IMG/VR virus record: IMGVR_UViG_3300018080_008436
Span: 412,249-476,248 of that record
DNA: 64,000 nucleotides
Direction: 5' to 3' (one strand)
Under the pieces are notes generated by a model that saw nothing but the letters and a program-made list of their open reading frames with translations, ran no database searches and was not told the DNA's origin. Shown one piece after another: positions 12,036 through 61,835 of the stretch. A program made the position numbers and the translations under genes. How positions within the stretch are numbered: the stretch's first letter is position 1; the number at the start of each line of letters is the position of its first letter.

Positions 12036-12899
12036 TTAGCTACCAGCGGTAACTGTGACCTTGGCTACTGCGTAGGTATTGATGATTACAATACCAACTT
12101 CCTCATAAATTACCCAACCGAGGCGGAGCTTCTTTGGATCGTCTGCTGGGAGGACGGTGATATCCTGACGAATCGGGAATGCACCAACGTACTCAGCAGG
12201 AGCGAGCAAGAAGACGGTATCGGTAGGCATCTTTGAAGATACGTGAATATCAGCAGTAAAGAGATGTCCGAACAAACCAGTTGTAAGAACTTCTTTCTGT
12301 GTTGCTTCATCATAGACAGTCTTACCAAATCCACGAATGTCAGCGTAACGAAGAGCATGCATAACAAGCTTACCTACTGTGAGGTCGTGCTGTTCGATGG
12401 TTGCGAAAGCTTGGTTCAAGGCGTTAAGGGTAAGAGCACCACCAGTTGAAACAACGGTATGTGCGGCATCAATTGCGGCGGCGATAGCGTTGAAGATGTT
12501 AAGATCTTCTTCCTTCTGAATCGCTTCTTTAGCTTTGATCTGAGCACGGTCTACAATGTAGAATCTACGAGCTTTAATCTCACTCAAGCGAATAGTAGGA
12601 TTGGTTGCAATCTCGAACGTAGGAACGAGAATTTCTTCACCTTCGGTAATACCATCAGGTACAGCGCCACGACGAGGAATAACCTGGGCGGTCTGGCGAA
12701 CGTCTTTCTCGTAACGTGCATAAGCGCCCTGAGGAAGCTCATCCACCATGAGAAGTTTACGTCCAACTGCTTGATATTCCAATGCTCTACGAATTGGCTC
12801 GACCATGGCCTGAGCCAATGCTACTCTACCTTCAGGTGTCTCAAGCGCCTGAGCGATAAGAGCTTCTCTTTCTGCATTAACAGATCTTTTATTAATCAT
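12036..12899 (-). CDS. major capsid protein (HK97 fold)
   Basis: 287 aa; spine-helix-like DRAQIKAKEAIQKEEDLNIF; C-terminal GWVIYEEVGIVIIN..AV; follows protease/scaffold and decoration genes; strong SD and codon bias. Confidence 0.85.
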   Translation of the reverse strand: MINKRSVNAEREALIAQALETPEGRVALAQAMVEPIRRALEYQAVGRKLLMVDELPQGAYARYEKDVRQTAQVIPRRGAVPDGITEGEEILVPTFEIATNPTIRLSEIKARRFYIVDRAQIKAKEAIQKEEDLNIFNAIAAAIDAAHTVVSTGGALTLNALNQAFATIEQHDLTVGKLVMHALRYADIRGFGKTVYDEATQKEVLTTGLFGHLFTADIHVSSKMPTDTVFLLAPAEYVGAFPIRQDITVLPADDPKKLRLGWVIYEEVGIVIINTYAVAKVTVTAGS

Positions 12900-12969: not shown

Positions 12970-13491
12970 TTATACAAGAAGCTTGTATTCGATATAAGTG
13001 TTAGAGTTATCGCCAGCAAGGGCCTGATCGCCATTGATGTCGATGCCAGGTACGCCACTTGGGTATGAGCCAGCGGCACGAGTCAAACGAGCAACAGGAG
13101 TTCCAGTGGTCAAACCACCTTCATCTGTAGTGTCGAGTACACCAAGGGCATTACCATAAAGCAATGCGCCAGGATTGGCGGATGATACGTTTGAAGCGAA
13201 CTGGTCGGTTGCAAACTCACCACCTGAGTGATAGACAGTCATTTTACCTGAAGCTTTGGTTTCGTCAAAATAATCGGAAACCCTGTTCTGCCATCCTGCT
13301 GAGATGCCAGGCATTGCTGAAGCGCTAGTTGACTTGGTGTCACCAGCTACACCGTAAACGGCGGCGTTGGTGCTTGCAAGTACTACTTCGCCAGATGTAT
13401 TAAGAGAGACAAGCTGTCCTTCTTTAATAGTTTCGCCAGAGGCGACATCCTGTTCAGCGGCTACTACATGAAATTTTTCTACAAGAGCCAT
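12970..13491 (-). CDS. putative capsid decoration/cement protein
   Basis: 173 aa, Gly/Ala-rich beta protein (IKEGQLVSL...YGVAGD...GKMTVY) directly upstream of the MCP. Confidence 0.6.
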   Translation of the reverse strand: MALVEKFHVVAAEQDVASGETIKEGQLVSLNTSGEVVLASTNAAVYGVAGDTKSTSASAMPGISAGWQNRVSDYFDETKASGKMTVYHSGGEFATDQFASNVSSANPGALLYGNALGVLDTTDEGGLTTGTPVARLTRAAGSYPSGVPGIDINGDQALAGDNSNTYIEYKLLV

Positions 13492-13780: not shown

Positions 13781-14014
13781 TTATTCTTTTAGAGACTTTC
13801 TTCTTTGCAATTCTTTTTTCATAGCATCTCTGGTTTTATCTAACTCTTCTAAGTCATATCCCCAATCGATACCATAATTTTCCTGTTCAATAATTTGATT
13901 ATCATAATAAAGCCAAGCCAACTCATTTTCTAATTCTTCTGTTGGAATTTCTTCTATTGGTTCTTTAGATATAATGTATTTATGTTCTTTGTTAGACACT
14001 CTTATTAATTTCAT
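13781..14014 (-). CDS. small hypothetical protein with MKLIRVS leader
   Basis: 77-aa ORF; start overlaps the upstream gene's end. Confidence 0.6.
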   Translation of the reverse strand: MKLIRVSNKEHKYIISKEPIEEIPTEELENELAWLYYDNQIIEQENYGIDWGYDLEELDKTRDAMKKELQRRKSLKE

Positions 14015-14262
14015 AATTTCCCCAATATTTCATCTAATCTTGTTGAAATCTCGACATCTGATAATTGTCTGAATGGAGCCTTAAATACAGTCCCAGACGG
14101 CAATGTAACCTGCACCTTGTCTCCACCTCCCAACACCTCTCTAAACTCATGATAAGTTAATCTATTGGGCTTGGCTCTTAATCCCTTGACATATACGACA
14201 TTGTTGTTTGAGTCTACCCAAACAATCGATGGAATTTTAGAAGATATCTTGATTATTTTCAT
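14011..14262 (-). CDS. small hypothetical protein with MKIIKIS leader
   Basis: 83-aa ORF; AGG-N19-GAATTA at 14272-14296. Confidence 0.6.
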   Translation of the reverse strand: MKIIKISSKIPSIVWVDSNNNVVYVKGLRAKPNRLTYHEFREVLGGGDKVQVTLPSGTVFKAPFRQLSDVEISTRLDEILGKL

Positions 14263-14370: not shown

Positions 14371-17300
14371 TTAACGTTGGTCGTTGTCAATCAAGTTGTC
14401 ATTTAACAACTTGGAACCAATCGTAAACGCTCCAGCGATTTTGTCCTGGAAGCTAGGCTCCTGGGCAGGCTGTGATTGAATTACGATAGCTGGAAGACCA
14501 GTTCCAGCAGTTTTAACTTGCTGTTCAGTAGAAGCAGTTTTAACGGCCTTAACTGGGAACATAGTTTCCGCAACTGAAGCAATTTTATCAACTTCAAACT
14601 GAGCTAATGCAGTAACAACATTATCAAATGTGCTCTTATCAGAAGCAATTCTGTTGTTAGCGGCTAACCATGAAGCAGTACGAAGAGCTTCCTCTTTACG
14701 TGCTTCCTTGATTCTAGCAAGTTGTTCTTCTCTTTTCTGTTGTACCTGTTTGAGATACTTATCATTGATGCCAGGCATATCTGACTGAGTTTCCTTCTCA
14801 ACGCCCATATAAGCGTTATCGATAGGTACATCAGGCTTAGGTGCGTTAACGTCGATGTTATCTGGTCCTTCCTGTCCCATAGTAGCTTTTGCTCTAGGAA
14901 CGTCTGGATTTGCCATCTTTACATCGATGTTGTCAGCGCCTTCATGACCCAAAGAAGCATCGGCTCTAGGAACTCCAGCTTCAACATCACCCTCAACGGT
15001 GTCAACTTCTTTCATCTTTTTCGCTAATGCAAGCTGTCTCTGAGCCTCTTTGAGGTTTTTCTCAGCTTCAGCAATTACAGTACCTTTAATCTCATTATTG
15101 ATTGCAGGCATATCTGATTGAGTAGCTTTCTCAATTCCCATGTAGGAACTATCAACAGCTACGTCTGGCAGACCAGCAGGTGGATTAATGTTATCTGCGC
15201 CTTCATGGCCCATGGTAGCATTAGATCTAGGAACCTGAGGTTTGGCCATAGGAACGTCAATATTATCTGCTCCTTCATTCATCATAGTTGCCTTACTACG
15301 AGGTACTCCAGCTTCAACGTCTTTCTCAATAGTTTTGATGAGCTTAGGCTTACCTGCCAACTTAATGTTGGACTCAGCGCCAGAGCGTCTTACTCTTGAG
15401 GAATTCATTGCCAAAGCCTCTGCAAGTGCGTCGGTATCAAATGTTTCCATATCTTCTCCTTCTGGAACTTCTTCAGCTTCAAATGCAACGTCCTCTGCGA
15501 TGTCCTCTTCCAAGGCTTCATCACCAGTATTTTCAACAACTTCGAGGTTGTCTCCAGTGATGGTTACAGATTCAACTGCGACTTCTTCTGGTTCTTCAAT
15601 AATCTCATCAACCTCTACATCGACTGAGTCGAGTGGTTCGAGATCATCTCCGATTTCAACTTCTTCCAAGATAGCCTGAGCTTTCTTGGCTAAGTTTTCT
15701 TCTTTCTGAATGAACAATTCGTTCATTGTAGCGAGATCGTATTGGCTAAGTGCAATCTTTCCTTCTTTTGCTTCATCAGCAAAAGCTTGGACGTAAATGT
15801 TATCAGATTCTTCTTTAGCGAACTTCTTCTTAATGCAGTTGCAAATTGAAGTTGCTTGAACAACATCATGTCCTTTGCTCTTTTGATCTTCAATACATTC
15901 ATCCATTGGATCTACTTGCATTAAAGTGTCAGCCAATTTTTTCATTTGACGGACTTTGGTAAAACCAAGTCTCTTCAGTTCTTTGCATACGCATTCAGCC
16001 AATGGCTTATCTTTGCAAGGACCGAATCTAGCTACAGTGTTTCCACCATAAGTTCTAGCAATTCTTTCAACGCAGTTAGCAGTTGGGAACGTATCGGCGT
16101 TAGCCTGAGCAGTCTTCAACATTCCAACAACCTTAAGCTTAGAAGCGAACTTCCTTGCTTCTTCTTTGCATTCTGGGCAACTATTGTCAGGAGAAAGATC
16201 CCATTCAACTCTTAACAAGCCGTTTGAAGGATTCTTACTACTAACAATGAGGTTCTTCTCGAAAGAAGTTCCGCATTGTCCGCATTCGCATTTGGTGCGA
16301 CCATCGCCGCTTGCGATGACATCACATTTCTTATTTCCGCAAGCTGGGCAGACATCGCCATGGGCCTCTCTGTTAGCGGCAATACGAACAATAGAATCTT
16401 TATCAATTCTAGTTTGAGCGGCAACTGGAAGTGCTGGCATTTCTTCAGGCTCTTCAGGGCCTTCAACGTCTTCCATACCTTCTTCGCCAACGCTTTTGGT
16501 AGGTTTGATGATTCTAAATTCAATTTCTTTCTTAATGAGAGCTTCGTATTCGGCTCCGCAATTCTGGCAGTTACCGATAATTCCACCGTCATCTTCTTTA
16601 GTTACATCAACATCAGATGAACCACACTCTGGGCAAATGCTCCAAGGAGCTTGCTTTTCGCCAACAGTTGGGATCTCATCCTCTAACTCATCCTCATTAC
16701 CAGTGGTGAGAGCTTGAAGAGCAGGATCTTCTCCCATTGGAGGAGCGTCAAGACCTTCCTCAGGAGCGCCTGGAGCGGCGACTTCGCCTGCGGCCCCTGG
16801 CATTCCGCCACCCATTGGTGACTGAGCAGTTCTTTTCATCTTCTTATTATTATAGGCAACCTGATTAAGGTTTTCCATTTCAATATCAGCGTCAAGTCCG
16901 TCCTCAATGCCTTCTCCTACGAGATCGCCTTCAGGAACGATTTCTTCTTCAATTGGTGCTACTTCTTCGCCAATCGGAATTTCAACTGACTCTTCGCCAG
17001 CATCAGTCTGGACAGCGATTTGAATGGTATTACCATCAATAGTAACATTAGTGATAGAAGCAAGCTTCATATTTTCAGTTGCTAAAGCGCCTTTAGCAAA
17101 CTTAACGATATCTTTCTTGAAAGTGGCAGAAGTCTTTTGAGAACCAAGTTCTTCGAAATCGGTTTCAATTACGATGTCTGCTCCATCAAGTTTTTCAGGA
17201 TTAAGAATTTCTTCCTGAGCCTGGACTCGCTTTCTTGATTCCAAAGAAGCTAGAATTTCTTCTCTTTCAGCATCTCTTTTAGCCTTTTCGTTTTTAACGA

Positions 17301-17460
17301 CAGCTTTGGTTGATGCTTCTTTAGTTTCTTTCTTCTCTTCTTTTTCTTCGCATTCTTCATCCTCTTCGTCACACTCTTCTTCTCCAGCGACAGCTTGCTT
17401 CAGAGCATTTCTAAGTTCGTCCTTAACGTTAACTTTTGCTACTGTAGAGGCTTCAGCAGT
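14371..17460 (-). CDS. C-terminal scaffold/core part of the prohead protease-scaffold protein (Zn-ribbons, internal repeats); reached by a -1 shift
   Basis: Frame is open 72 codons upstream of the TTG at 17244, up to ~17463, with no ATG/GTG; many CxxC pairs; repeated VEAGVPR...EGADNID units. Confidence 0.7.
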   Translation of the reverse strand, partial: TAEASTVAKVNVKDELRNALKQAVAGEEECDEEDEECEEKEEKKETKEASTKAVVKNEKAKRDAEREEILASLESRKRVQAQEEILNPEKLDGADIVIETDFEELGSQKTSATFKKDIVKFAKGALATENMKLASITNVTIDGNTIQIAVQTDAGEESVEIPIGEEVAPIEEEIVPEGDLVGEGIEDGLDADIEMENLNQVAYNNKKMKRTAQSPMGGGMPGAAGEVAAPGAPEEGLDAPPMGEDPALQALTTGNEDELEDEIPTVGEKQAPWSICPECGSSDVDVTKEDDGGIIGNCQNCGAEYEALIKKEIEFRIIKPTKSVGEEGMEDVEGPEEPEEMPALPVAAQTRIDKDSIVRIAANREAHGDVCPACGNKKCDVIASGDGRTKCECGQCGTSFEKNLIVSSKNPSNGLLRVEWDLSPDNSCPECKEEARKFASKLKVVGMLKTAQANADTFPTANCVERIARTYGGNTVARFGPCKDKPLAECVCKELKRLGFTKVRQMKKLADTLMQVDPMDECIEDQKSKGHDVVQATSICNCIKKKFAKEESDNIYVQAFADEAKEGKIALSQYDLATMNELFIQKEENLAKKAQAILEEVEIGDDLEPLDSVDVEVDEIIEEPEEVAVESVTITGDNLEVVENTGDEALEEDIAEDVAFEAEEVPEGEDMETFDTDALAEALAMNSSRVRRSGAESNIKLAGKPKLIKTIEKDVEAGVPRSKATMMNEGADNIDVPMAKPQVPRSNATMGHEGADNINPPAGLPDVAVDSSYMGIEKATQSDMPAINNEIKGTVIAEAEKNLKEAQRQLALAKKMKEVDTVEGDVEAGVPRADASLGHEGADNIDVKMANPDVPRAKATMGQEGPDNIDVNAPKPDVPIDNAYMGVEKETQSDMPGINDKYLKQVQQKREEQLARIKEARKEEALRTASWLAANNRIASDKSTFDNVVTALAQFEVDKIASVAETMFPVKAVKTASTEQQVKTAGTGLPAIVIQSQPAQEPSFQDKIAGAFTIGSKLLNDNLIDNDQR

Positions 17461-19940
17461 TTTTCATCAACTTTCTTACTGATACTCTGTTCACCAAGTT
17501 CGCCATCTGAGAGAACATCAACAGCATCAATAATAGTATCTGGATTAATAGTGTCATCAGATGCAATTACTCTCAACTTGTTAACAAGACAGTGTTCGAC
17601 TTCAGTTGGGGAAGCAGTTGCAACTTTTACGTTTTTGGCGTTCCAATAGGATGATCGCTTCGAAAAAGAAGCAGATTCAGAAGATTGAGGTTCTTCTAAC
17701 AAAGATCCTGCTAATCTTACACGTTCCTTAGTGGTTGCAACGCAGTTGTTCGCAATTTCTTGCAATTCTTGTGGGGTTGCTCCAGTTTCAAGGGAAACCT
17801 CTGCAAACGCTTCAACGACAGCATCCATGTGTTCCTTAGCGGACTTAAATAGAGATGCATCTCTGTTGGCCTGACGTGCCCATGCAGGATCGACATTGTC
17901 TAACTGCTTCTGGGTGATTACTTCAGGCTCATTGTTGGTACGATAGCCTTCACTATCCAATTGTTTTTGGGTGACAGTATGTTTGTCCTCATCCTTACGG
18001 GGAGATACACCATTACTATCATTATCCAATTGTTTTTGGGTAATGACTTCAGGTTCGTCATCCTGTCTGGGGTTCAGCTTCAACTCGCTGTCATCCAACT
18101 GTTTCTCAGTGATAACTTCTTTTTCACCTTTTCTTGGACTCGCGTTATCATTGCTGTCCAGTTGTTTTTGTGTGATGACCTGCTGTTCTTCCCCAGTGCG
18201 ACCGTGATACAACTCGGATCTGTGATCTTCGAGTTGTTTCTGAGTGATCACTTCTGGAGTTGCAAGAACGGTATTGGCACCAGCCTCTTTAGTTTCTTTA
18301 CTCATTCTTTCTACTCCTTCTCTTGGATTTGTTTTGGCGAATAAATCTAAAAATTGATGAGCCGCTACTTTTGGCGACTCACTGATTAAATTCTTATCTT
18401 GATCTGACAGATCGTCATAGGTCCAAATTTGCATTCTGTCAGAGTTAGTGTCCTCCGCGACGATGATAAATGAATCGTCTCTATTTTTCACTGCGAGTTT
18501 TAAATTACCAATTTGCATTGATGGTACTTCTTTTATATACTCAAAAAAGCTTTGTTTTTCCTGCCACGAGTCAGATAAAACTTGCATAGCTTTTTCACGT
18601 TGTTTTTCTTTACTAGCTACGGTTCGTCTTTTTCCCATAGATTTAACTCCCGTTTTATTCATTTTATCGCACAGACTCGCGGCCTTTTGCAAAACAGAAG
18701 CTCCGAACTCATAATGATCTACGGCCTCATCTGCGACTCTCCTAATTAAATGTGAACTCTGGGCGGCTGGACGCATAGGTGCGGTAATAGGCATCTGCGG
18801 TGTATTTACTGGAGGTTGCCCTGGCGCTCCAGTTGTCGTTCCAACTTCCATCGCTTGTTCTGAAGCAACTGGCATTGGTGCGGCATCTCTTGGAGCCGTT
18901 TCCAATCCCCCTCCTGGTGTTGGTGGTACTTCCCCTGTTGGAGGCATACCTTCTTCTGGAGCGTTACCCTCGGTTCCAGGAACCTGAGATTCAACACTTC
19001 CATATCCAGCCCCTACTAATTCATCTGACCAAGTTTGTAGACTAGCAATAATATCTACTAAATCACTTGCAAATTCAACTTCAACTTGTTGTCGGTTCTT
19101 AATCAAGTTAACAGCAATGTTCTCTAATGTTTCAAGAACCTGATTAATCTGATCAATTTCTTCCTGACTTGCATTTTTCTCAAGTGCCGCAGTCTTAATC
19201 ATTCTAAGGTAATTCTCAACATTGGCAACTCTTGCAAGATAATCATCGTTTGGAATTATACCTTCAATATGGCAACTTGGGCAAGCAGGATCAACAACTC
19301 CACTTAACTCAATAAACTTGATCCCATAATTATGTTCAAATACTGGTTCGTCTTTGAATTCCTTCACTTCGCCAGTTCTAACGTTTCTGGCCCTACCAGT
19401 AAATTTTCTGCTCTTTCTATTTCTAATATGTTCGCAGTAATCTTCAGTTCTCTCAGCTTTGTTTTCGCAAATACTGCAAGTACTGTATTCAACTGAAGCA
19501 CCCATGGAGACTCCAGTCATATATCCTTGTTCAATACCGCGACAAATATGAGGATAAGCATCTCTATCTACAAAAGCTATTGTATAAACAGCATTATCAT
19601 CTTCGTTCCATTCGGCCCAGATGATCTTACCTTTAGCCTTTTCTATATCTTGATTTTCATGATTGGTAAAGAAAGGGACACCTTCGAAACTCTTATAAGC
19701 TTTAAGCAATTCTTCTTTCGAAAATGAATCACCATTACTATTAGGTTCGTCAGCTTTGATTGCTTTAGCCCTGAAAAATAAAGCATTTGGATGCTTTGTA
19801 ATTTCTGCTTGAACAATCTTTTCTTTCTCTGAACCAGGCTCTATCAAAACTCTGCCAGAGGCAGTTTTAATCATAACCTCGTCTTCCTTAGAAATTTGCT
19901 CTACAGGACAAGGTTCGGTTAAAGCAACTTTTATTAACAT
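17439..19940 (-). CDS. prohead (maturation) protease with scaffold extension
   Basis: NSNGDSF...FFTNH...AKGKI...GVSMGASVEYSTCSIC...CEHI...FIELSGVVDPA, typical of HK97-type prohead serine proteases; located between portal and MCP. Confidence 0.8.
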   Translation of the reverse strand: MLIKVALTEPCPVEQISKEDEVMIKTASGRVLIEPGSEKEKIVQAEITKHPNALFFRAKAIKADEPNSNGDSFSKEELLKAYKSFEGVPFFTNHENQDIEKAKGKIIWAEWNEDDNAVYTIAFVDRDAYPHICRGIEQGYMTGVSMGASVEYSTCSICENKAERTEDYCEHIRNRKSRKFTGRARNVRTGEVKEFKDEPVFEHNYGIKFIELSGVVDPACPSCHIEGIIPNDDYLARVANVENYLRMIKTAALEKNASQEEIDQINQVLETLENIAVNLIKNRQQVEVEFASDLVDIIASLQTWSDELVGAGYGSVESQVPGTEGNAPEEGMPPTGEVPPTPGGGLETAPRDAAPMPVASEQAMEVGTTTGAPGQPPVNTPQMPITAPMRPAAQSSHLIRRVADEAVDHYEFGASVLQKAASLCDKMNKTGVKSMGKRRTVASKEKQREKAMQVLSDSWQEKQSFFEYIKEVPSMQIGNLKLAVKNRDDSFIIVAEDTNSDRMQIWTYDDLSDQDKNLISESPKVAAHQFLDLFAKTNPREGVERMSKETKEAGANTVLATPEVITQKQLEDHRSELYHGRTGEEQQVITQKQLDSNDNASPRKGEKEVITEKQLDDSELKLNPRQDDEPEVITQKQLDNDSNGVSPRKDEDKHTVTQKQLDSEGYRTNNEPEVITQKQLDNVDPAWARQANRDASLFKSAKEHMDAVVEAFAEVSLETGATPQELQEIANNCVATTKERVRLAGSLLEEPQSSESASFSKRSSYWNAKNVKVATASPTEVEHCLVNKLRVIASDDTINPDTIIDAVDVLSDGELGEQSISKKVDEKLLKPLQ
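17895..18260 (-). repeat. six degenerate (E/Q)VITQKQL protein repeats in the scaffold
   Basis: EVITQKQLEDHR, QVITQKQLDSN, EVITEKQLDDS, EVITQKQLDND, TVTQKQLDSE, EVITQKQLDNV. Confidence 0.85.
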
Positions 19941-19941
19941 A

Positions 19942-22900
19942 TTATCTTCCTTTTCTAAGATTCTTCGAGAACTTCTTTGCTAACCTTAAGAGTTCTAAAG
20001 ATTCATGTGATTTTCCTTCATTGTCCAATTCTTGGGACAACTTTATGATGTTTTTAAGAGCGTCAGTCGATGCCTGTGGGCCATCATCATCGTCATCATC
20101 CACATCAAAATCTTCTTGAAGACCATCAAGAAGTCCAGGCAATGCAGGTGTTGCAGGTTGTTTTGCAGGAGGTTGCTCCCTTCTTTCCCCAGGTTGTTCT
20201 ACGACATCGACTTCTCTGTCAATAACAACCTCTGGCAAATCAGGTGTTACTTCTTCAGGACCTTCAGGACCTTCAGGAACAACCTCTTCAGCGCCATCAC
20301 CAACATCATTTATTTCGAAATCTTCTTGATCCAACAAATCTCCTTCATCAAGTACCTGTTCAAGCTCAAGTGCAACCTGATCCAACATATCTTGATCAAC
20401 ATCATGAACTCCTCTCATATAAGCGAGGTCTTCTGTGTTAATTCTAATCATTGCTTCGTCACCATATATCTCTTCGAAATATTTTCTCATGGTTTCATCA
20501 CTTCTGATTGTTCTGTATAACTTTCTTTGAGCAGGTGTTCTGGCATAGAATTCATATGCCAATTGATTTGAAGTTACATTGTCTGCTGGAGGTCTCTGGA
20601 ATACCAACGCAATTCTTTGAATATTCTTGTCCCCATTCTCATCCATAGATATCAGTGGAGTCTTGGTCCCTGGATCTGTAAGTCTCGTTCCTTTCTCAAC
20701 AAACTCAAAAGCCATTGTTTCAGTTATTTCTCCAACATCAAGAAATGCATCTAACAAACTATTATGAACTCCAAATTGACTCATTTCTTGTTTATCTTCA
20801 TCCCAAACAATACTAACAGCATTGCCAACATCTTCATCGGCACCTTTCTTTGTTCTCTTGCCATCAATTTGTTTTTGTCGTCTATAAACCTTTTCCATTT
20901 CATGAGCATAACTTCTTGCTTTCTTGGCTATGTCTTTTATTTCAGAATCAATTTGAATTTGTTCCCCATTTTCCCCTTCTTCAACATATGGTCTAAATGG
21001 CTCCAATTCTTTTATTTGTAAAGGTACATCTAATTGCCTTGCTCGAATAGCCCTTGTCATCATTGCTCTAACCTGACTTGGGAGAAACTTATTGGCATGT
21101 CCATTCTCATTAAGGAAGATTCGGCCCCTTTCTACAGAATCTTTATCTATCTGTTCTCTGGTGGTAATATTGTTCTCACCCATGAACTCAGCCAAAGTGT
21201 CTAAAGCATTTTTCTTATCGAAGAATTGCAATACTTTCTCCATAGGAGTTCTAACTGTATTCTCATTAAAGCATCTTGGGAAACCATTGGCATCCAAAAA
21301 TCGGACTACAGTTTCGGCAGTACCTTGACCAACATGAGCAAAGTTATTTGCCTCCATACACTCAGCAACCTTCTTTTTAACAACTCTGTCCAAAACTTTA
21401 ATCATTAATGGCTTTACATTACCCTTATTAAATAATGGAGTATAATTGTTAAACTCATCTTTGTGTTTCTTTCTCTTACCCCTACCACTAGCACTTCCAC
21501 CTGGGCCTTTGGGATCTCCACCAGCATTTAAGAAATCAACTACAACTTGCATTGAGTCTTCACTTATCTCTTCTATATTTCTAGAAGCCATAAATTCAGC
21601 AATTTCAGCAATAAGATTCTTCTCATTCTTCACATTTGATTTAATCTGAAGGGCTGAGTTTCTTAAAGCGCTACTAGGTTTAATGAATGCATGAGTCTCA
21701 CTCATTCTTTTGAAGTTCTTTCGCATAACATCAATACTTAATAACTTATCAATGTCTTCTTCTGCCAATTCTCTCTCTTCTTCTGTAGAGTCAGGGTCGC
21801 TAATAATATCTTTGCGGTTTTTGATTTTTTCTTCAATTATGTTTTCATAGAAAGCAAATATATGAGTGACTAACTTATTAAAGATTCTGTTCCCACTATA
21901 TCCATTAAGAGCGCCATCTTTAGAGAAGTTAAAGTTATCTAGGTTAAGAACTCCACCATTAGTAACCTGTTGTCTTGGATCTGGGTTATCTGCCTGTCGT
22001 TGACCTTCTTCCCATTCGTTCAGAGCTTCCTGCCTATCTTCAGAAACGCCACCAATTCCAGTTAGGAAATTAACAAATGTTCTAAAATCACTTGTAAAAT
22101 CAAACCCTGCTTGACCTGCTTGAGGGATTCCCCCAAGAAGTCTGTATCGGTATCTCTCTCCACCAGTTATATTTTGATCTTGGAGATAGGATCTCACATA
22201 ATGTAAAAGATCTTCATTGTATTGTTTGAACTCTTCCATTCCCATCATGTTAGCCAAAAGTTTCCTTAAACCATTTCTATTTAAGAACATTCTTGTTCCA
22301 TTTGGAGAAATGATCATGTTATTCTCAGCGGCTTGATTGTAATTAGCGAAAGAATAGATCTGACAATCAGGATCATTCATATAATTTGCGGGTAAAGTAG
22401 AATCTCTTTTAAGAAGACGATTGTCTACCATAGGACCAACAGCTTTTTTCTGGAAGAATCTTGGACCTTCTGTCTTCTTATCAAGATTATAAATAGTTCT
22501 ATAGTTAAAGATGTAGGAATAGTCATCCAATCCGAACTTCTGAATAAGAGGTGATGGACTCTCGGGATTGGTTAAGCTTTCCACTTGTTGTTCCTGAGTA
22601 ACATGATCTTCTCCTAGATCTTGGAACATATCAAGTTTATGAATTTTGAGATTCTTTTCTAATTCTTCATTCTCTCTGTTTGGAGCAGGGACTGGATAGG
22701 ATCTATGGAATGCTTGGAATTTCCCAAATGCGTCTGCGTAATACAAACCTGCTAGGTTAAGAACTTGATCTCCTTGTATCTTTTTCCCTCTAACTTTTGC
22801 AAATGCGGCATCCTTAGCTTTTCTTTTAGCCACTTCATCGGCGGCTTCCTGATCTTCATGTTTTGGATTTCTACGTTCTTCTTCTTGAATGTTTGGCAAT

Positions 22901-23859
22901 AACATTTGATAGAAGTGATCTTGAACCATCCCTTGAATTTGTCCAGATGACTTTTTGAGAAGTTGTATGATTGTTCCCATAGGGATATCTTCCCCATTTT
23001 CTGCATGGGGGTACATTCCCATAATACGCAATGCGTCACACAATCTACCGTTATCCTCTGGGGCCATTAAATAAGGCCCAACATAAATAGCATGAAGACC
23101 ATGATGTTTACTAAATCCGACATAAGTCTTAAAAATCTTTCTCATTTCTGCGGCACCAGCAGGATCAACTAATTCATCATCTTGACCCTCTTTCGCATCT
23201 CCATATCCATACTTTCTTTTATAGTATGCATATCTCTTCCTCTTCTCATCTTTGATGTCTTGTAATGCGCCTTCGAATGACGGGTTGTCTGCTATAAACT
23301 CTTTCAAGTCATCAGCTTCGTCTAGCATAATCGCTTCATATGGAACCCAAATATAATCGACTCTGTATCTAAGAGCGTCTGCGCCCATAGCTTCTTTAAT
23401 AATTACATCGATATTGAACGATTCTAGTTTCTTTTCTCTCTCTTCTTCCCTCTCTTCCTTTTTCTCTCTCTTGGCTTTCCAATCATTCACTTTCTGAGAA
23501 AGTCCATGGAGTTGTTTTGAGGTATAAGGTTTCAAGCTACTGGGGGTGGGGACTCCCCAAGTTTCTTTAGCATATTTAGCGGCTGAGTCTAAACTGTCGA
23601 AATATTTTCCACCAGCAGAGTAAGTAGCGGGTAGCTTTCTTACGCCTGCGAAGAATTTAGCTCTAGGAGCGTGTACTTTAGCTGGTCCAATAATACAATA
23701 GTATCCGTCACCATTTGGGGCTTGCCCTTCAAAACGGAAATAACTGCCTGGACCGACAACATCTTCAAACTGATCTTTGAGAAATTGGGTTTTATCAGTA
23801 TATTTCTCGCCCCACTTGATGTTTTTCTCAACGAGTTTTTCTTTGGATTCTTTGCGCAT
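19942..23859 (-). CDS. large hypothetical head-associated protein (1305 aa)
   Basis: Lies between portal and protease; AGG-N19-GAA at 23904-23928; internal IIKEA motif; acidic tail ending in a helix NIIKLSQELDNEGK. Confidence 0.7.
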   Translation of the reverse strand: MRKESKEKLVEKNIKWGEKYTDKTQFLKDQFEDVVGPGSYFRFEGQAPNGDGYYCIIGPAKVHAPRAKFFAGVRKLPATYSAGGKYFDSLDSAAKYAKETWGVPTPSSLKPYTSKQLHGLSQKVNDWKAKREKKEEREEEREKKLESFNIDVIIKEAMGADALRYRVDYIWVPYEAIMLDEADDLKEFIADNPSFEGALQDIKDEKRKRYAYYKRKYGYGDAKEGQDDELVDPAGAAEMRKIFKTYVGFSKHHGLHAIYVGPYLMAPEDNGRLCDALRIMGMYPHAENGEDIPMGTIIQLLKKSSGQIQGMVQDHFYQMLLPNIQEEERRNPKHEDQEAADEVAKRKAKDAAFAKVRGKKIQGDQVLNLAGLYYADAFGKFQAFHRSYPVPAPNRENEELEKNLKIHKLDMFQDLGEDHVTQEQQVESLTNPESPSPLIQKFGLDDYSYIFNYRTIYNLDKKTEGPRFFQKKAVGPMVDNRLLKRDSTLPANYMNDPDCQIYSFANYNQAAENNMIISPNGTRMFLNRNGLRKLLANMMGMEEFKQYNEDLLHYVRSYLQDQNITGGERYRYRLLGGIPQAGQAGFDFTSDFRTFVNFLTGIGGVSEDRQEALNEWEEGQRQADNPDPRQQVTNGGVLNLDNFNFSKDGALNGYSGNRIFNKLVTHIFAFYENIIEEKIKNRKDIISDPDSTEEERELAEEDIDKLLSIDVMRKNFKRMSETHAFIKPSSALRNSALQIKSNVKNEKNLIAEIAEFMASRNIEEISEDSMQVVVDFLNAGGDPKGPGGSASGRGKRKKHKDEFNNYTPLFNKGNVKPLMIKVLDRVVKKKVAECMEANNFAHVGQGTAETVVRFLDANGFPRCFNENTVRTPMEKVLQFFDKKNALDTLAEFMGENNITTREQIDKDSVERGRIFLNENGHANKFLPSQVRAMMTRAIRARQLDVPLQIKELEPFRPYVEEGENGEQIQIDSEIKDIAKKARSYAHEMEKVYRRQKQIDGKRTKKGADEDVGNAVSIVWDEDKQEMSQFGVHNSLLDAFLDVGEITETMAFEFVEKGTRLTDPGTKTPLISMDENGDKNIQRIALVFQRPPADNVTSNQLAYEFYARTPAQRKLYRTIRSDETMRKYFEEIYGDEAMIRINTEDLAYMRGVHDVDQDMLDQVALELEQVLDEGDLLDQEDFEINDVGDGAEEVVPEGPEGPEEVTPDLPEVVIDREVDVVEQPGERREQPPAKQPATPALPGLLDGLQEDFDVDDDDDDGPQASTDALKNIIKLSQELDNEGKSHESLELLRLAKKFSKNLRKGR

Positions 23860-23945: not shown

Positions 23946-26168
23946 TTACTCTTTTGGTGCTTGATTTTGAATAGCCATTTCCTTTTTCATAATTGTCTGC
24001 ACAATTTTACTCATTGCCTGCTGTGGCTGTTTCTCTATCTCACTATCTTTAAACCTTAAAACAGTCCAGCCCATCTGGGCAAGTTGCCTATCTCTTTCTT
24101 GGTCTTTTTGAATCTGTTTTGGAGAATTGTGAAAAATCTCTCCATCTGCTTCAATAATAAGTCTCAAATGAGGGAGGGCAAAGTCTACAGGATGTTCCAT
24201 ATTTCCTATCATAATCTTATACTGAGGGATAATAGGATATTTAATAATCCCGTCTTTTTGATGTTGAACCATATGATCCATCAATTCTCTTTCAATTTTT
24301 GTAAAAGCGATTCTCCCCTTCTCATCTCTTACCTGTCCATCTTTCCCTTGCGAATAGGAAGATGGTTTTGCGGTCTCTGAACGCATTTTCTTTTGCTCAG
24401 AAACTAATTTATCTCTGGTTTTCTTTTTCAAAACCTTTCCGCCAAATTGTGATGGATCAGCAACTTCCGCAGTCAATGGCCCTGTTTTTGCCAATACGGG
24501 TTCTCCACCTGTTGGTGCGGCTGGCGCTCCACCGAGATCTCCTCCTGGCTCAATAGGGGGTTCTCCCCCCATACCTCCCATTCCACCTCCAAGATCCATG
24601 CCTCCTGGCATTCCGCCGAAGCCACCACCCATGTCTCCTCCAGGCTGTTGCCCCATACCTTGTCCAAGGGCCATCATTTGAACGGCATCATAGCGTTTTC
24701 TTTCAATTTCTTGATCTGGGTCAATATCAAATGCTTCAAGAACAGTCTGCGCACTAACAAGACCCTTCTCGTACAATTGAATAATAAATGTTCTGTATTG
24801 CTGTTGATCTCTAAGATGCATGGAGTTCCATTTAATCTTAGGAACCAGATACTCTTCTTCTCCCGTCTCAGGATTTGTATCAATAAACCCTTGTCGTTTA
24901 GCTTCTGGGAGATATAGGAAATCTGTTATCCAATCAGCTATTTGACTTCTAAATGTGTCCAACCTGTGAATCATAGCTTCAATACCAACAGAAGCGCTTG
25001 CAAATGTTGGACCTTCACCATTAAGAAGAGCATTGTTAATCATCATACCATCAAGGACTTCCTGATTGATGAATTCAAACTCATTACTAAGAGTAAGAAC
25101 TTTGCCAGAAGCACCCACCCAGTCAAAATCAAATGCATGGTGTGTGACAATGGTAAGGTTAGGGTCATTAGCAGTTTCGGCAAGCTGTGCTTGTACAGCG
25201 GCAATATCGGCAGGTCCAGCAGGACGTTCATCACTACCGACTTTAACAATCTTAATAGGAACGATTAGACGTTCTGCAACGATCCACTGAGCTACCATGA
25301 GCTTAGTTTTATATGAAAGTATAGGGAATAATCTACGGACCATTCCGATTCCATAACGAGTATATCCACTTTCACCATATTTCAAGTGAGAAACGTTACG
25401 ATTATCTAATCGGATAGGCTGACCTGACGAAACAAGTGCGATTACATCTGGAGAAAGTTTCTCATATCCAGGTGTTTTTCTCTGGACCATATTGATGAGT
25501 TCTTCATCTGGTTTCAAAGCGATAATCGGGTCAGGATTTAAAGGTGGGGTATAGACATCTACAAAGTCAGGGTTAAGGATGACCATTCTTCTGACCGTTC
25601 CTCCCTCATGATCGCAAATAATATCTCCGACCATTCCAGAGCCTCCACAATGCTCACAATGGATTTCTGCAAATGGGAAGCAATCGCCAAGCAAATGGAC
25701 TTCATGACTTATCAAACGACACCATTTAGTCAGTTCGAGTCTTTTTTTGAATTTATCAAAGTATAACTTAATCTCTCTATCTTTACACTCATGTTCCCAA
25801 TCACTCATTGGAAAATAACTGTAGAAATCAATTGCAGAAGCTACCTTGGGTTCGTTTTCATAGAAGAATCTTGCCCATTGATATTGTTCTATTCTTTTAC
25901 TTGGGATCTGCCAGTTGATTGGAGTATGAACTGGGGAGAAAAATTGAGGCTGACCATAAATAGTTCCTGCACTTGCTACGGAACTAAATTTCGCCATACC
26001 ATTTCCCCATTGGGTACTGGCACCAGTCGTTGGGGCATAGTTTTGTCTTGGGATAGGTCGATATGATTGGTGCTGTGGAACCTCGCTGGTAGCGAGTTTA
26101 GCGGGATCTCTATTTCTTAATGCTCTAAAAGTCTCTTCTAGATTGGTAGTTTGTAGGTGAACTTGCAT
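23946..26168 (-). CDS. portal protein with C-terminal DUF559/Vsr-like endonuclease domain
   Basis: WARFFYENEPKVASAIDFYS, HLLGDCFPF, YGIGMVRR, IVPIKIVKVG portal-like core; Gly/Met/Pro linker; then PVDFALP..RLIIEADGEIFH...KDQERDRQL..GWTVLRF. Confidence 0.8.
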   Translation of the reverse strand: MQVHLQTTNLEETFRALRNRDPAKLATSEVPQHQSYRPIPRQNYAPTTGASTQWGNGMAKFSSVASAGTIYGQPQFFSPVHTPINWQIPSKRIEQYQWARFFYENEPKVASAIDFYSYFPMSDWEHECKDREIKLYFDKFKKRLELTKWCRLISHEVHLLGDCFPFAEIHCEHCGGSGMVGDIICDHEGGTVRRMVILNPDFVDVYTPPLNPDPIIALKPDEELINMVQRKTPGYEKLSPDVIALVSSGQPIRLDNRNVSHLKYGESGYTRYGIGMVRRLFPILSYKTKLMVAQWIVAERLIVPIKIVKVGSDERPAGPADIAAVQAQLAETANDPNLTIVTHHAFDFDWVGASGKVLTLSNEFEFINQEVLDGMMINNALLNGEGPTFASASVGIEAMIHRLDTFRSQIADWITDFLYLPEAKRQGFIDTNPETGEEEYLVPKIKWNSMHLRDQQQYRTFIIQLYEKGLVSAQTVLEAFDIDPDQEIERKRYDAVQMMALGQGMGQQPGGDMGGGFGGMPGGMDLGGGMGGMGGEPPIEPGGDLGGAPAAPTGGEPVLAKTGPLTAEVADPSQFGGKVLKKKTRDKLVSEQKKMRSETAKPSSYSQGKDGQVRDEKGRIAFTKIERELMDHMVQHQKDGIIKYPIIPQYKIMIGNMEHPVDFALPHLRLIIEADGEIFHNSPKQIQKDQERDRQLAQMGWTVLRFKDSEIEKQPQQAMSKIVQTIMKKEMAIQNQAPKE

Positions 26169-26209
26169 GCACACATTCCTGATTTAGATTTTTTTTATTA
26201 TACAAAATC

Positions 26210-58751: not shown

Positions 58752-61700
58752 CTATTGGCTTTCGCTAGAACTTTCGCTAAACATTTCAGATGAAGAGGAA
58801 GATGACTCACCTTGAGATGATGTTGATGAGCTTTCGGAGTATAACTCACTAGAGGTACTTGAGCTTTCGGAGTATAACTCACTAGAGGTACTTGAACTTT
58901 CAGAGAATCCTTCAGATGATGTACTTGAACTATCGGTACTTTGTGAGTATTGTTCACTAGATGTACTTGAACTATCAGTACTCTCTGTTAATCTACGGAA
59001 AGTTCCATCCTCCCAAATTGCGTTTCCTAAATCACCATCCCAGACAAAGTTATCTCCATTCTCTAGTATCCATTGTTCGTCATTAATGGATGAAGATGAA
59101 CTTTCTGAACCAGAGCTTGTGGAGAATGGACAACTTTCTTCAACAAATCCAGGGTCGCCAAATCCCCTGCCTTTTGTCCAGACATTACCTTGATTAATTG
59201 GATAAATTTGGTTTGGGTCACTATAGAACATCCAAAGATTTATGTCATTAGTAACTGTATCGTTAACGGCCCAATAAAAATTACCACCTGATTCTCCATA
59301 AAATAGATATAAGTCATTTGTATAACGTTTATATATTGGATACCCATTAAATGTTTGTATAGTTTTGTAATACGGCCCATTAACATCTTGAGCAGGGACA
59401 GAGCTTGAACTTGATTCTGAAGAAAATTGTTCACTTGATGTTGAGGAACTCTGAGAAATACTGCTAGATGATTCAGATTTTGATGAATCGCTTACTGAAC
59501 TTTCAGAAAGTGAGCTTGAACTTTCAGATTGAGAGCTAGAAGACTCACTAGTAAATCCTCCAGAACTTGTACTACTAGAGTCTTTAGAACTTGAACTACT
59601 TTCTCCAACTCCATCAGCAAGGGTTGAAAGTCTAATGGCAGATAAACCAATTTGGCTTGCTACCGTTAAATCTGTTCCACCTGCCTGACCTTGGAGAGAT
59701 GTCCTTAACTCAACTTCCTCCCCCGCTGTCAATTCAAGGACAGTGTGGGCGTTAAAACCACCATTCCAAGTGTCTGCTCCCCCCTGAGAACCACGTTTGT
59801 AATTACCATGACCCCCAATATTACTTTCGACATCATCAACAAACCAATCCGCGCCAAATGTAAGTCTTGTCCCACTAGTTGAAACTGTATCATCTGACAA
59901 TCCATTCCCCATAAACAAATAATCATCAGTAATATTAACTTGAACTTCAGCATTAGAGTTTTGAGTATAGGAGTTTGTGTCAATTTGATCAACATCTCTA
60001 GCAATATTAAGAATGGTACTTGCTCCCACATCCTGTCCACCAGTACTATCATGAGTAATAATGGTTTCTGTATGCCATGGTACTTCCATAATTTCCAGAC
60101 TAGATGAGTTAACAACTCTGGCCATACCTGTTCCATCAATGTCTGCGTTACCTCTTTGGATTTGCAAGATAAGATCTTGATTTGCAGTTGTATTATCGAC
60201 TAGAAAAAGCGCATGAGCCACACCTGGACCTGAACTATTACCTCTTTCATAGACATATGAATAACTACCCTCAATTGCTGTACCACCCAAAGTTGTCCTT
60301 AATATTCTTTGTGTTCTACTAGATCCAGGTCCAAACTTGAAAGAATATTTGACAAGATATTTTGCGACCTTTTTAAGTCGAACGGTTGTTGCATTTTGTT
60401 GTTCGATAACATCTGTGTCAGTTTCGTCTTTAGTATTAAATGTAATGTCCTGCCATACTGTTCCAACGTAAGCTGTAGTATCTATATCGTCAAAGTATTG
60501 TCCATATGCGACTTTGTCTTCACTTGGCAATTTTACCAACATTAATGAAGTTTTAGAGTTCGATAACACATCAGATGCACTTATAAGTACGGGTTGCCAT
60601 TCAACTCGGACATCTTGTCCTCTAACTACATCTATAAAAACCGCTCCAGATGTAAAGCCTTCATCATTCTCATTATTTCTGGCATAGCCATATCCATAAC
60701 CACCATCTTGAACTACACCATTAACCAAAACTCTTGATTGAATTGAATGTCTGCCATCAGATGTTGATGTTGATCTAATCTCATACATGAGTAGGTATTT
60801 ACCATTGCTATCTATAGTGATGTCTGTATTGTTTACGTTTTTGTTATAAATGCTGTCTTCTCTAACAGTGTTATTAAATTGAACTCCTTCCCATACCCCA
60901 ATGTTTCCTATTGTTTGGGTATTATTTGTGTCTTGGTAAATTGCAATAAGTCCAGTATTTTCTACATCAGACTCACTACTGGAACTTGTGATTCCCTCAC
61001 TACTGGAACTATTGGAACTGTCAGAACTAAATTCATCGTTAAGCCATTTATCAGCGAGATATGCTTCTACTTCATATCTCTCTGATGTAGACAGAACCCT
61101 ATCATAGAGAAGTATTTCAGCGACTAAACCTTCAGTATATGAATCATTATTTCTGTTTCTTCCAACAGCATAAAAATCAAACAACGGATTGAAAACGGAA
61201 CCAAGAGTTTGATCTAAGGTTTTCAATCCATTTATATAACCTTTTAAACTATTGGCACCATCAGCAGTAATTGATAAAACGGTTGGCAATCTATTCCCAG
61301 AAGATTGCTCAATGGAATATTCTGTAGCTCCTACTCTAATTCCTAAAGTATCTGATGCATTATAATTGACTTGAAAGGAAGTGTCTGGAGTTTCTGAAGA
61401 ATCATTACAAAACCAACTATCAAATTCAGATTGAGTTTCTGTTGATTTATAAACCAAGAAAAAAGTCATTGGGCCTTGCCAATTAACGATATCTCTGTCT
61501 AAATAATCGTTATCACCATCAAACTCAACAGTGTTCCTTCCATTCATTGAGTTCAAGTTGTAAACTGGTTGATTTGCAGGGGTTGTCTGCTCCACATTAA
61601 GTATATTACCAGATTTGTCAGCCCAAGCAGATACATTACTTCCGTTCAAGGTAATAGTGGATGCATCATCTGCATCTAGCCATAACCTCAATCCATTGGA

Positions 61701-61835
61701 CGGGAGTCCTTCTGATGATGTTGAGCTACTATCTCTGCTTGAACTGGAGCTACTATCTCTACTGGAAGAGCTAGAACTACTGTCTCTGCTTGAGCTTGAG
61801 CTACTATCAAAACTACTTGAACTACTTGAAGCCAT
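58752..61835 (-). CDS. Ser-rich modular fibre protein with LamG/ConA-like domain and repeated beta-sandwich domains
   Basis: LWLDADD...VSAWADKSGN...EILLYDRVLS..ERYEVEAYLADKW; poly-Ser/Glu linkers. Confidence 0.75.
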   Translation of the reverse strand: MASSSSSSFDSSSSSSRDSSSSSSSRDSSSSSSRDSSSTSSEGLPSNGLRLWLDADDASTITLNGSNVSAWADKSGNILNVEQTTPANQPVYNLNSMNGRNTVEFDGDNDYLDRDIVNWQGPMTFFLVYKSTETQSEFDSWFCNDSSETPDTSFQVNYNASDTLGIRVGATEYSIEQSSGNRLPTVLSITADGANSLKGYINGLKTLDQTLGSVFNPLFDFYAVGRNRNNDSYTEGLVAEILLYDRVLSTSERYEVEAYLADKWLNDEFSSDSSNSSSSEGITSSSSESDVENTGLIAIYQDTNNTQTIGNIGVWEGVQFNNTVREDSIYNKNVNNTDITIDSNGKYLLMYEIRSTSTSDGRHSIQSRVLVNGVVQDGGYGYGYARNNENDEGFTSGAVFIDVVRGQDVRVEWQPVLISASDVLSNSKTSLMLVKLPSEDKVAYGQYFDDIDTTAYVGTVWQDITFNTKDETDTDVIEQQNATTVRLKKVAKYLVKYSFKFGPGSSRTQRILRTTLGGTAIEGSYSYVYERGNSSGPGVAHALFLVDNTTANQDLILQIQRGNADIDGTGMARVVNSSSLEIMEVPWHTETIITHDSTGGQDVGASTILNIARDVDQIDTNSYTQNSNAEVQVNITDDYLFMGNGLSDDTVSTSGTRLTFGADWFVDDVESNIGGHGNYKRGSQGGADTWNGGFNAHTVLELTAGEEVELRTSLQGQAGGTDLTVASQIGLSAIRLSTLADGVGESSSSSKDSSSTSSGGFTSESSSSQSESSSSLSESSVSDSSKSESSSSISQSSSTSSEQFSSESSSSSVPAQDVNGPYYKTIQTFNGYPIYKRYTNDLYLFYGESGGNFYWAVNDTVTNDINLWMFYSDPNQIYPINQGNVWTKGRGFGDPGFVEESCPFSTSSGSESSSSSINDEQWILENGDNFVWDGDLGNAIWEDGTFRRLTESTDSSSTSSEQYSQSTDSSSTSSEGFSESSSTSSELYSESSSTSSELYSESSSTSSQGESSSSSSEMFSESSSESQ

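What the first reader, a model, noticed from the sequence alone, without database searches (positions are those of the whole stretch)
17439..17470. Prohead protease and scaffold joined by a -1 frame break (about 1856-aa fusion)
Seen: the 833-aa ORF ends GAT GAA AAA CTG CTG AAG CCT CTA CAG TAG. The -1 frame opens right after TGA TGA at the A5 run (17460-17464) and reads EK-TAEASTVAKVNV... for 72 codons with no ATG/GTG into the 957-aa ORF. The junction recreates a KTA motif. It is either a programmed shift that sets protease:scaffold stoichiometry or a one-base homopolymer assembly error. The site is not a canonical X XXY YYZ heptamer.
Basis: partly seen in the sequence, partly recalled or inferred. 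Interest (0 to 1): 0.6.

Follow-up and report, generated by a model that had tools for sequence, protein, structure and literature searches.

The report
One-base gap splits one phage gene
The "frame break" between the 833-aa and 957-aa ORFs is one base missing from this sequence record: the phage has one continuous 1856-codon gene with a head-maturation protease domain at its start, so there is no programmed frameshift.

Summary

The break is not biological.
- A second IMG/VR record of the same phage matches the window over 60,000 bases except for one extra base here. It reads GAA AAA CTT GCT GAA and gives one 1856-aa ORF.
- An independent assembly (Logan) of the run flagged as the likely source sample has the same extra base, at depth 64.
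- More than 100 listed protein relatives (33-75% identity) are continuous proteins of about 1700-1900 aa, longer with inteins. Thirty IMG/VR loci (29 besides the same-phage record) have one frame open across the whole fetched stretch.
- The break lies in a conserved, gap-free block (KVDEKLAEA).
- The missing base is the third base of Leu828 (CTT), next to the A5 run, not in it. A 75%-identical relative has GAA AAG there, so the run is not conserved.
- There is no slippery heptamer and no downstream RNA structure.

What is really there is a giant fusion protein in a huge phage (the source contig is about 0.5 Mb). Its N-terminal domain has the T4 gp21/assemblin protease fold, and the gene lies between the portal and major capsid genes. 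A conserved internal Shine-Dalgarno site plus ATG at Met546 suggests a nested product without the protease domain. That is an inference.

The parts
14371..19940 (-). One gene of 1856 codons plus stop once the missing base is counted. In this record it is split into an 833-codon ORF (19940..17439) and a startless open frame (17463..14371).
   Evidence: The intact 1856-aa ORF is in the sister record, L002 6001..11571. More than 100 listed full-length relatives.
17457..17459 (-). Site of the missing base. The coding strand reads CT-G here where the sister record and the Logan contig read CTT G (Leu828 CTT). On the + strand one A is missing beside 17458.
   Evidence: L002 sequence. (14,484 bases, 0 mismatches, 1 gap). 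table 4 ('put in behind 17457: A', X1 contig depth 64.3). (codon view, with the 75%-identical relative L010 also showing CTT).
17439..17441 (-). Premature TAG stop created by the one-base gap. It is not a real gene end.
17460..17464 (-). It is identical in the intact record, and relative L010 has GAA AAG here, so it is not where the difference lies and is not conserved.
17242..17244 (-). TTG, the first possible start of the downstream frame. It is an internal Leu codon of the continuous gene, not a start.
   Evidence: upstream residues are conserved in relatives.
19251..19793 (-). Head-maturation (prohead) protease domain, about residues 50-230. His94, Ser145, Ser153, Cys155/158/169 and His171 are invariant.
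   Evidence: phrog_18299 at 1.9e-19 and phrog_2774 at 2.1e-32. tblastn to phage G gp19 and Gordonia/Mycobacterium phage proteases. AF2 model (pLDDT 73.6) matches T4 gp21 (5jbl, E 4.6e-4, TM 0.57 by target) and herpesvirus assemblins, and BFVD prohead proteases.
18303..18317 (-). Internal GGAG (18317..18314), 8 nt of spacer, then in-frame ATG (18305..18303, Met546). Candidate nested start for a 1311-aa product without the protease domain.
   Evidence: sequence; 25 of 30 distinct relatives have GGAG 5-10 nt before an in-frame ATG at this position, against 45 of 947 other in-frame ATGs, and the GGAG sits in different codon registers; this genome's structural genes use the same kind of ribosome-binding site. 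Inference only, not shown.
17901..18251 (-). Repeats of V-I-T-Q/E-K-Q-L, five exact matches to the motif, at residues 564-680. The Q and L are invariant across relatives.
15841..16635 (-). Cys-rich region (residues 1103-1367) with invariant CxxC pairs. Weak zinc-ribbon similarity, all below the Pfam cut-offs.
14854..15276 (-). Four EG(A/P)DNI motifs (starting at residues 1556, 1580, 1667, 1691) with VPR motifs between them, conserved in relatives. A helical C-terminal region follows.
23946..26174 (-). Portal protein gene (context).
   Evidence: phrog_16240 at 1.6e-47.
12036..12899 (-). Major head protein gene (context). A 173-aa ORF (12970..13491) and an 83-aa ORF (14011..14262) lie between it and the fusion gene.
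   Evidence: phrog_2522 at 1.8e-72. Gordonia phage Pupper has the same order: portal ... 864 aa, 1082-aa capsid maturation protease, 171 aa, major head protein.

Best explanation
The phage carries one continuous gene of 1856 codons. This record lacks one base, the third base of Leu828 (CTT), which puts a TAG eleven codons downstream and shifts the rest of the gene into the -1 frame. The gap is most likely an assembly or consensus error, or at most a minority allele picked up by that assembly. It is not a recoding signal. The gene product is a giant fusion protein. It has an N-terminal serine-protease domain of the T4 gp21 / HK97 gp4 / herpesvirus assemblin fold, followed by about 1600 residues of conserved but unassigned sequence (repeats, zinc-ribbon-like Cys clusters, acidic linkers, a helical C-terminus). 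The gene is encoded between the portal and major capsid genes. By analogy with other long capsid maturation proteases, I infer that it is built into the prohead core and processed there. I also infer that a conserved internal ribosome-binding site and ATG at Met546 gives a second, protease-less product from the same frame. That would be the way this family sets the ratio of protease to core protein.
For: Same phage, other assemblies:
- L002 (IMG/VR, 296 kb) equals the window over 14,484 bases with 0 mismatches and 1 gap. Window 1-60000 matches that record at 100% except for that base. L002 has a 1856-aa ORF.
- The Logan contig of run X1, flagged as the likely source sample, is 12,110 bases at depth 64. 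It covers 16400-18270 with 0 mismatches and the same extra base.
- The gapped 34-mer occurs in no other IMG/VR record. In JGI metagenome contigs it occurs in only one, a 524,692-bp contig that is presumably the record's own source. The intact 35-mer is in L002's record.

Relatives:
- 152 relatives were found in all; more than 100 of the 120 listed are full-length, 33-75% identical, 1700-1900 aa or longer with inteins.
- An alignment of 20 shows the block PD..ID..DV.S....ISxKVDEKLAEA....K.ELR.ALK running through the break with no gaps.
- 30 of 30 IMG/VR loci, fetched without any filter on protein length (one is L002's own record), have one frame open through the whole locus.
- The 75% relative L010 reads GAT GAA AAG CTT ACT GAA GCC.

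No recoding signal: there is no X XXY YYZ heptamer, and the 119 nt downstream fold no better than shuffles (z +0.53).

Protease and nested start: for the protease; for the nested start.
Against: Raw reads could not be seen. Logan contigs show which version is present, not the share of reads with each version, so a real minority or sample-specific deletion allele is not excluded. X1 is only flagged as a possible source. One 63%-identical relative (L007) also has a frame break nearby, seven codons upstream of this one. It is a one-base insertion giving a +1 frame and lies 412 nt from a contig end. That is an odd coincidence. The role of the C-terminal 1600 residues and the nested start rest on inference only.
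Confidence: 0.92

Rival explanations
1. A genuine one-base deletion allele is fixed or dominant in the sampled population of this phage. The gene is then truly split or inactivated there, as a pseudogene or a two-piece gene.
For: The gapped form is in the JGI contig that probably underlies this record. Illumina assemblies rarely make indel errors outside long homopolymers. Another relative (L007) also carries a break within seven codons.
Against: The Logan assembly of the likely source run has the intact form at depth 64. The sister record is identical over 60 kb except for this base, so any such mutation would be extremely recent. The downstream piece has no start codon for 72 codons. A head gene conserved in all relatives is unlikely to be dispensable.
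Confidence: 0.06
2. A programmed -1 ribosomal frameshift on G AAA AAC joins protease and scaffold at a set ratio.
For: The -1 frame opens exactly at the A run. tRNA-Lys could re-pair from AAA to AAA after a one-base slip.
Against: The same phage has an intact ORF in two other assemblies. None of the more than 100 listed full-length relatives and none of 30 loci has a two-frame arrangement at this site. The A run is not conserved, being GAA AAG in L010. There is no canonical heptamer. The downstream fold has z +0.53, and 139 of 200 shuffles fold at least as well. The break lies inside a conserved gap-free block, not at a domain border.
Confidence: 0.01
3. There are two separate genes, and the downstream one starts independently at TTG 17244.
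For: TTG 17244 is the first common start codon in the downstream frame.
Against: The 72 codons upstream of it are open against a chance of 0.007. They are homologous to conserved residues of the continuous proteins of relatives. No relative has a gene border there.
Confidence: 0.01

Closest known systems
Long 'capsid maturation protease' of Gordonia phage Pupper (gp94, 1082 aa) and its homologues in large Mycobacterium and Gordonia myophages
   Same: The N-terminal protease domain is 35-39% identical over residues 39-219. The gene order matches: portal ... large unknown protein, long protease fusion, a protein of about 170 aa, major head protein. The Pupper protein is a BFVD fold match at 4.5e-20.
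   Different: This gene is 1856 aa against 1082 aa. Nothing beyond the protease domain aligns. The Cys-rich region and the two repeat families are found only in the metagenomic relatives.
Bacillus phage G gp19 (300 aa)
   Same: It is the best cultured-phage match to the protease domain, 42.7% identity over residues 66-215 and BFVD fold E 1.3e-21. It also lies between the portal and head genes of a huge phage.
   Different: It is a stand-alone protease with no long C-terminal extension.
T4 gp21 prohead protease (PDB 5jbl) and herpesvirus assemblins
   Same: The predicted fold of residues about 50-230 matches 5jbl (Foldseek E 4.6e-4, probability 1.0, TM 0.57 by target), followed by HCMV, HSV, VZV and PrV proteases.
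   Different: Sequence identity is 9-16%. There is an inserted Cys/His-rich loop (C155, C158, C169, H171, C220, C223). I did not check how the catalytic residues superpose.
Nested protease/scaffold genes: lambda C/Nu3 and herpesvirus UL26/UL26.5 (from my own knowledge, not tested here)
   Same: One frame encodes a protease fused to an assembly protein, with an internal in-frame start that gives the protease-less part in excess. Here a conserved GGAG-N8-ATG at Met546 fits that pattern.
   Different: No expression data exist here. There is no sequence homology to Nu3 or UL26.5. A scaffold role for the C-terminal part is not shown.
Programmed -1 frameshift sites of phages (tail chaperone G/GT type, dnaX type; from my own knowledge)
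   Same: Only the appearance in this record: two ORFs overlapping in the -1 frame at an A-rich site.
   Different: There is no X XXY YYZ heptamer, no stimulatory structure and no conservation of the two-frame layout. The break is absent from other assemblies of the same phage.

Membership tests
Programmed -1 ribosomal frameshift site | Slippery heptamer X XXY YYZ in the 0 frame | tested here: not met
   The 0-frame codons are GAT GAA AAA CTG. Only single-tRNA re-pairing on A AAA is possible.
Programmed -1 ribosomal frameshift site | Stimulatory RNA structure a few bases downstream | tested here: not met
   The 119 nt downstream have MFE -20.1 against a shuffle mean of -21.5, z +0.53.
Programmed -1 ribosomal frameshift site | The two-frame arrangement is conserved in relatives | tested here: not met
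   More than 100 listed full-length relatives are continuous proteins, and 30 of 30 loci have one open frame. The one other split (L007) is a +1 break at another codon.
Programmed -1 ribosomal frameshift site | The frame break is reproducible in independent sequences of the same genome | tested here: not met
   L002 and the Logan contig of X1 both carry the extra base.
Prohead (capsid maturation) protease, T4 gp21 / HK97 gp4 / assemblin fold | Profile or sequence similarity to known phage head maturation proteases | tested here: met
   phrog_18299 at 1.9e-19. tblastn found 290 phage records, best E 8e-28. There was no Pfam hit.
Prohead (capsid maturation) protease, T4 gp21 / HK97 gp4 / assemblin fold | Assemblin-like fold | tested here: met
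   The AF2 model has pLDDT 73.6, with the core at 83-95. It matches 5jbl at E 4.6e-4 and assemblins at probability 0.9-0.98.
Prohead (capsid maturation) protease, T4 gp21 / HK97 gp4 / assemblin fold | Conserved catalytic Ser and His | tested here: inconclusive
   His94, Ser145, Ser153 and His171 are invariant in 48 sequences. Inteins of relatives sit after residues 148 and 168, beside these residues. Superposition on the catalytic residues of gp21 was not done.
Prohead (capsid maturation) protease, T4 gp21 / HK97 gp4 / assemblin fold | Gene located in the head module between portal and major capsid protein | tested here: met
   Portal at 23946..26174 and major head protein at 12036..12899.
Nested protease-scaffold gene (lambda C/Nu3, UL26/UL26.5 type) | Internal in-frame start with its own ribosome-binding site | tested here: inconclusive
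   Sequence evidence only. GGAG-N8-ATG at Met546 is conserved in 25 of 30 relatives against a 4.8% background, and it sits in different codon registers. There are no expression data.
Nested protease-scaffold gene (lambda C/Nu3, UL26/UL26.5 type) | The C-terminal part acts as scaffold or core protein and is removed on maturation | not testable with these tools
   No family, solved relative or fold match for residues 330-1856.

The most novel reading that the evidence does not exclude
In this family of huge-phage head genes, one roughly 1800-codon frame gives two products: the full-length protease fusion, and a protease-less protein of about 1300 aa that starts at a conserved internal Shine-Dalgarno/ATG (Met546; window ATG 18305..18303). 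The ratio of protease to core protein would then be set by nested initiation, not by frameshifting. The intein insertions of relatives, beside Ser145 and His171, mark the active site.
Probability: 0.5. Interest if true: 0.35.

Novelty: not a real feature. Interest (0 to 1): 0.12.

Why it matters
As a recoding candidate it does not matter, because it is a one-base flaw in a metagenome-derived record. The practical points are these:
- The two ORFs of this record should be annotated as one 1856-codon gene, and the record should be flagged as having a frameshift at 17458.
- A giant, widely conserved protease fusion protein of huge phages remains unassigned over about 1600 residues. It is a reasonable target for structural and proteomic work on how very large capsids are built.
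- The conserved internal start site gives a simple, testable account of how the protease:core ratio could be set.

Tried and rejected
- blastn of the 5.6-kb gene against deposited phages: no match.
- tblastn of the downstream 1030-aa part against phages: no match.
- Pfam on both parts and on five segments: nothing above the cut-offs, only weak zinc-ribbon hints.
- Profile of 20 relatives against PDB sequences: nothing below E 0.1.
- ESM Atlas look-alikes for residues 900-1856: no usable hit.
- AF2 of residues 920-1400: poor model (pLDDT 59.5). The best VIA Z was 5.2, below the level that means anything, so no fold is assigned.
- Paper search for inteins in prohead proteases: nothing on this family.
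- Runs X2 and X3 hold the phage at depth about 3, but their contigs stop at 17418 and 17481, so they say nothing about the site.
- Fragments P0093 and P0097 start at Met546. I considered them as evidence for a separate gene and rejected them, because both lie 105-153 nt from a contig end.
- The L007 break was considered as support for a conserved shift and rejected: it is a +1 break, at another codon, next to a contig end.
- Read laying was given 2,101 bases.
Full report
**Observation.** The genes here are on the minus strand. An 833-codon ORF (19940..17439) ends ...GAT GAA AAA CTG CTG AAG CCT CTA CAG TAG. The -1 frame opens after TGA TGA at 17463 and is open for 1030 codons to 14371. Its first ATG/GTG/TTG is TTG 17244. 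From the gene's base composition, 72 stop-free codons have a chance of about 0.007, and the other two frames of that stretch hold 3 and 10 stops.

**The same phage elsewhere.** The window is the last 64 kb of a 476,248-bp IMG/VR virus record. A search with the 833-aa protein found a second IMG/VR record of 296 kb from another metagenome.
- Over 14,484 bases the two records differ by 0 mismatches and exactly one gap.
- Window 1-60000 matches that record at 100% apart from that one base.
- The sister record reads GAT GAA AAA CTT GCT GAA GCC where the window reads GAT GAA AAA CT- GCT GAA GCC. It therefore has one ORF of 1856 codons.
- The missing base is the third base of Leu828, one base past the A5 run, not in the run.

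**Reads.** Only Logan contigs were available, not raw reads.
- Run X1 is flagged as the possible source sample. Its 12,110-base contig at depth 64 covers 16400-18270 with 0 mismatches and one difference: an A put in behind 17457 on the + strand. That is the same extra base as in the sister record.
- Two other runs hold the phage at depth about 3, but their contigs do not cover 17419-17480.
- The gapped 34-mer occurs in no other IMG/VR record. In JGI metagenome contigs it occurs in only one contig of 524,692 bp, presumably the contig from which the window's record was cut.
- The intact 35-mer is in the sister record.

**Relatives.**
- The word search with the 1856-aa protein gave 152 relatives. 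Of the 120 listed, more than 100 are full-length proteins, 33-75% identical. They are 1700-1900 aa long, or 2000-2650 aa when they carry inteins.
- An alignment of 20 of them runs straight through the break. The family consensus is ...ISxKVDEKLAEA...K.ELR.ALK, and residues 801-850 form a gap-free block with mean identity 0.50.
- The protein search is blind to short fragments, so I also fetched DNA without any length filter. All 30 IMG/VR loci found with residues 440-1000 (one of them L002's own record) have one frame open through the whole fetched stretch (1082-1515 codons). Sixteen give a single tblastn alignment across the junction.
- A 75%-identical relative reads GAT GAA AAG CTT ACT GAA GCC, so the A run is not conserved while the CTT codon is.

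**Recoding signals.** There is no X XXY YYZ heptamer. The 119 nt downstream fold no better than shuffles (z +0.53). The 'KTA' at the junction exists only in the hypothetical slipped reading.

**A nearby second break.** A search with the 833-aa part found one other split gene on a long contig: L007, 63% identical. Its upstream piece ends DVISDS*, seven codons before the window's break, and the downstream frame is +1. Compared with kin it has an in-frame loss of eight codons plus one extra T (AGT T AAG). It lies 412 nt from the contig end. It differs from the window's break in direction and codon, so it does not support a conserved shift. I record it as a coincidence that I could not resolve.

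**What the gene is.**
- Residues about 50-230 match head-maturation protease profiles: phrog_18299 at 1.9e-19 and phrog_2774 at 2.1e-32.
- The same residues match 290 phage records by tblastn. The best are Bacillus phage G gp19 (42.7% identity) and large Gordonia and Mycobacterium phages.
- An AlphaFold2 model of residues 1-320, built from 48 sequences (pLDDT 73.6, core 83-95), matches T4 gp21 (5jbl, E 4.6e-4, TM 0.57 by target), then herpesvirus assemblins, and many predicted prohead proteases in BFVD.
- His94, Ser145, Ser153 and His171 are invariant.
- In intein-bearing relatives the inteins sit after residue 148 or residue 168, beside those invariant residues. Inteins are often found at active sites (my own knowledge).
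- The gene lies between the portal gene (23946..26174) and the major head protein gene (12036..12899, phrog_2522 at 1.8e-72). Gordonia phage Pupper has the same order, and its 1082-aa gene is annotated as capsid maturation protease.
- The remaining 1600 residues are conserved within the family but unassigned. They hold five VIT(Q/E)KQL repeats, an acidic linker of variable length, invariant CxxC pairs with weak zinc-ribbon similarity, four EGADNI motifs and a helical C-terminus.
- Pfam, PDB sequence search, the Atlas and a fold search of residues 920-1400 gave nothing usable. 'Scaffold' is therefore a guess from gene position only. The 173-aa ORF just upstream of the capsid gene is an equally open candidate.

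**A lead on stoichiometry.** Met546 is nearly invariant, and its ATG (18305..18303) is preceded by GGAG with an 8-nt spacer.
- In 25 of 30 distinct relatives a GGAG lies 5-10 nt before an in-frame ATG within four codons of that position. Only 45 of 947 other in-frame ATGs have one (4.8%). Two more relatives have it at an 11-nt spacing.
- The motif sits in different codon registers (GAA GGA G.., TCA GGA GTT, AAG GAG ...) while the encoded residues vary. That points to a constraint on the nucleotides rather than on the protein.
- The genome's own head genes use the same kind of ribosome-binding site.
- I infer a nested in-frame start that gives a protease-less product of 1311 aa. This is the arrangement known from lambda C/Nu3 and herpesvirus UL26/UL26.5 (my own knowledge). 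It is not shown: the sequences are related to one another, and there are no expression data.

**Verdict.** The frame break is a one-base omission in this record, most likely an assembly or consensus error and at most a minority allele. The phage's gene is continuous. As a recoding candidate the finding is not a real feature. The underlying gene is a new, very large member of the known class of prohead protease fusion proteins.

Noticed in passing
Relatives P0005-P0120 (none in the window); sites correspond to window about 19497 and 19437 (after residues 148 and 168): About 40 relatives of the 1856-aa protein carry inteins (Pfam LAGLIDADG_3, Intein_splicing, Hom_end_hint). The inteins sit at two recurrent sites of the protease domain: after GVSMGA(148) and after EDY(168), next to invariant Ser145 and Cys169/His171. 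Several relatives have both.
   Followed up: partly
window 18303-18317 (minus strand): A conserved internal GGAG-N8-ATG at Met546 of the fusion gene. It is present in 25 of 30 relatives against a 4.8% background and suggests a nested protease-less product.
   Followed up: yes
L007 7519-7545: A 63%-identical relative (JGI contig of 39.5 kb) also has this gene split, seven codons upstream of the window's break. The cause is one extra T, which gives a +1 frame, with an ATG for the downstream piece overlapping the stop. The break lies 412 nt from the contig end. Whether it is real or an artefact is not resolved.
   Followed up: partly
window 23946-26174 (minus strand), residues about 659-728: The portal protein carries a C-terminal DUF559 / REase_MTES_1575 endonuclease-like domain (Pfam 5.6e-13). 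The portal of relative L007 has the same domains.
   Followed up: no
whole record (G000, G001, L042): The same phage appears as a 476-kb and a 296-kb IMG/VR record, both labelled 'provirus' and 98% complete, and in a 524,692-bp metagenome contig. The window is the last 64 kb of the 476-kb record, while the 296-kb record runs about 32 kb further. The 'provirus' trimming and the completeness figures look unreliable for this huge phage.
   Followed up: no
window 58784-59550: Short stretches of 30-140 nt inside the 1027-aa ORF (58752..61835) have several 69-91% identical copies elsewhere in the sister record. This is a dispersed repeat or a repeated protein module.
   Followed up: no
window 19942-23859 (minus strand): A 1305-aa ORF between the portal and protease genes has no Pfam or PHROG match. 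Its size and position are conserved in relatives (1302 aa in L007, at least 1220 aa in L010, 864 aa in Gordonia phage Pupper).
   Followed up: no
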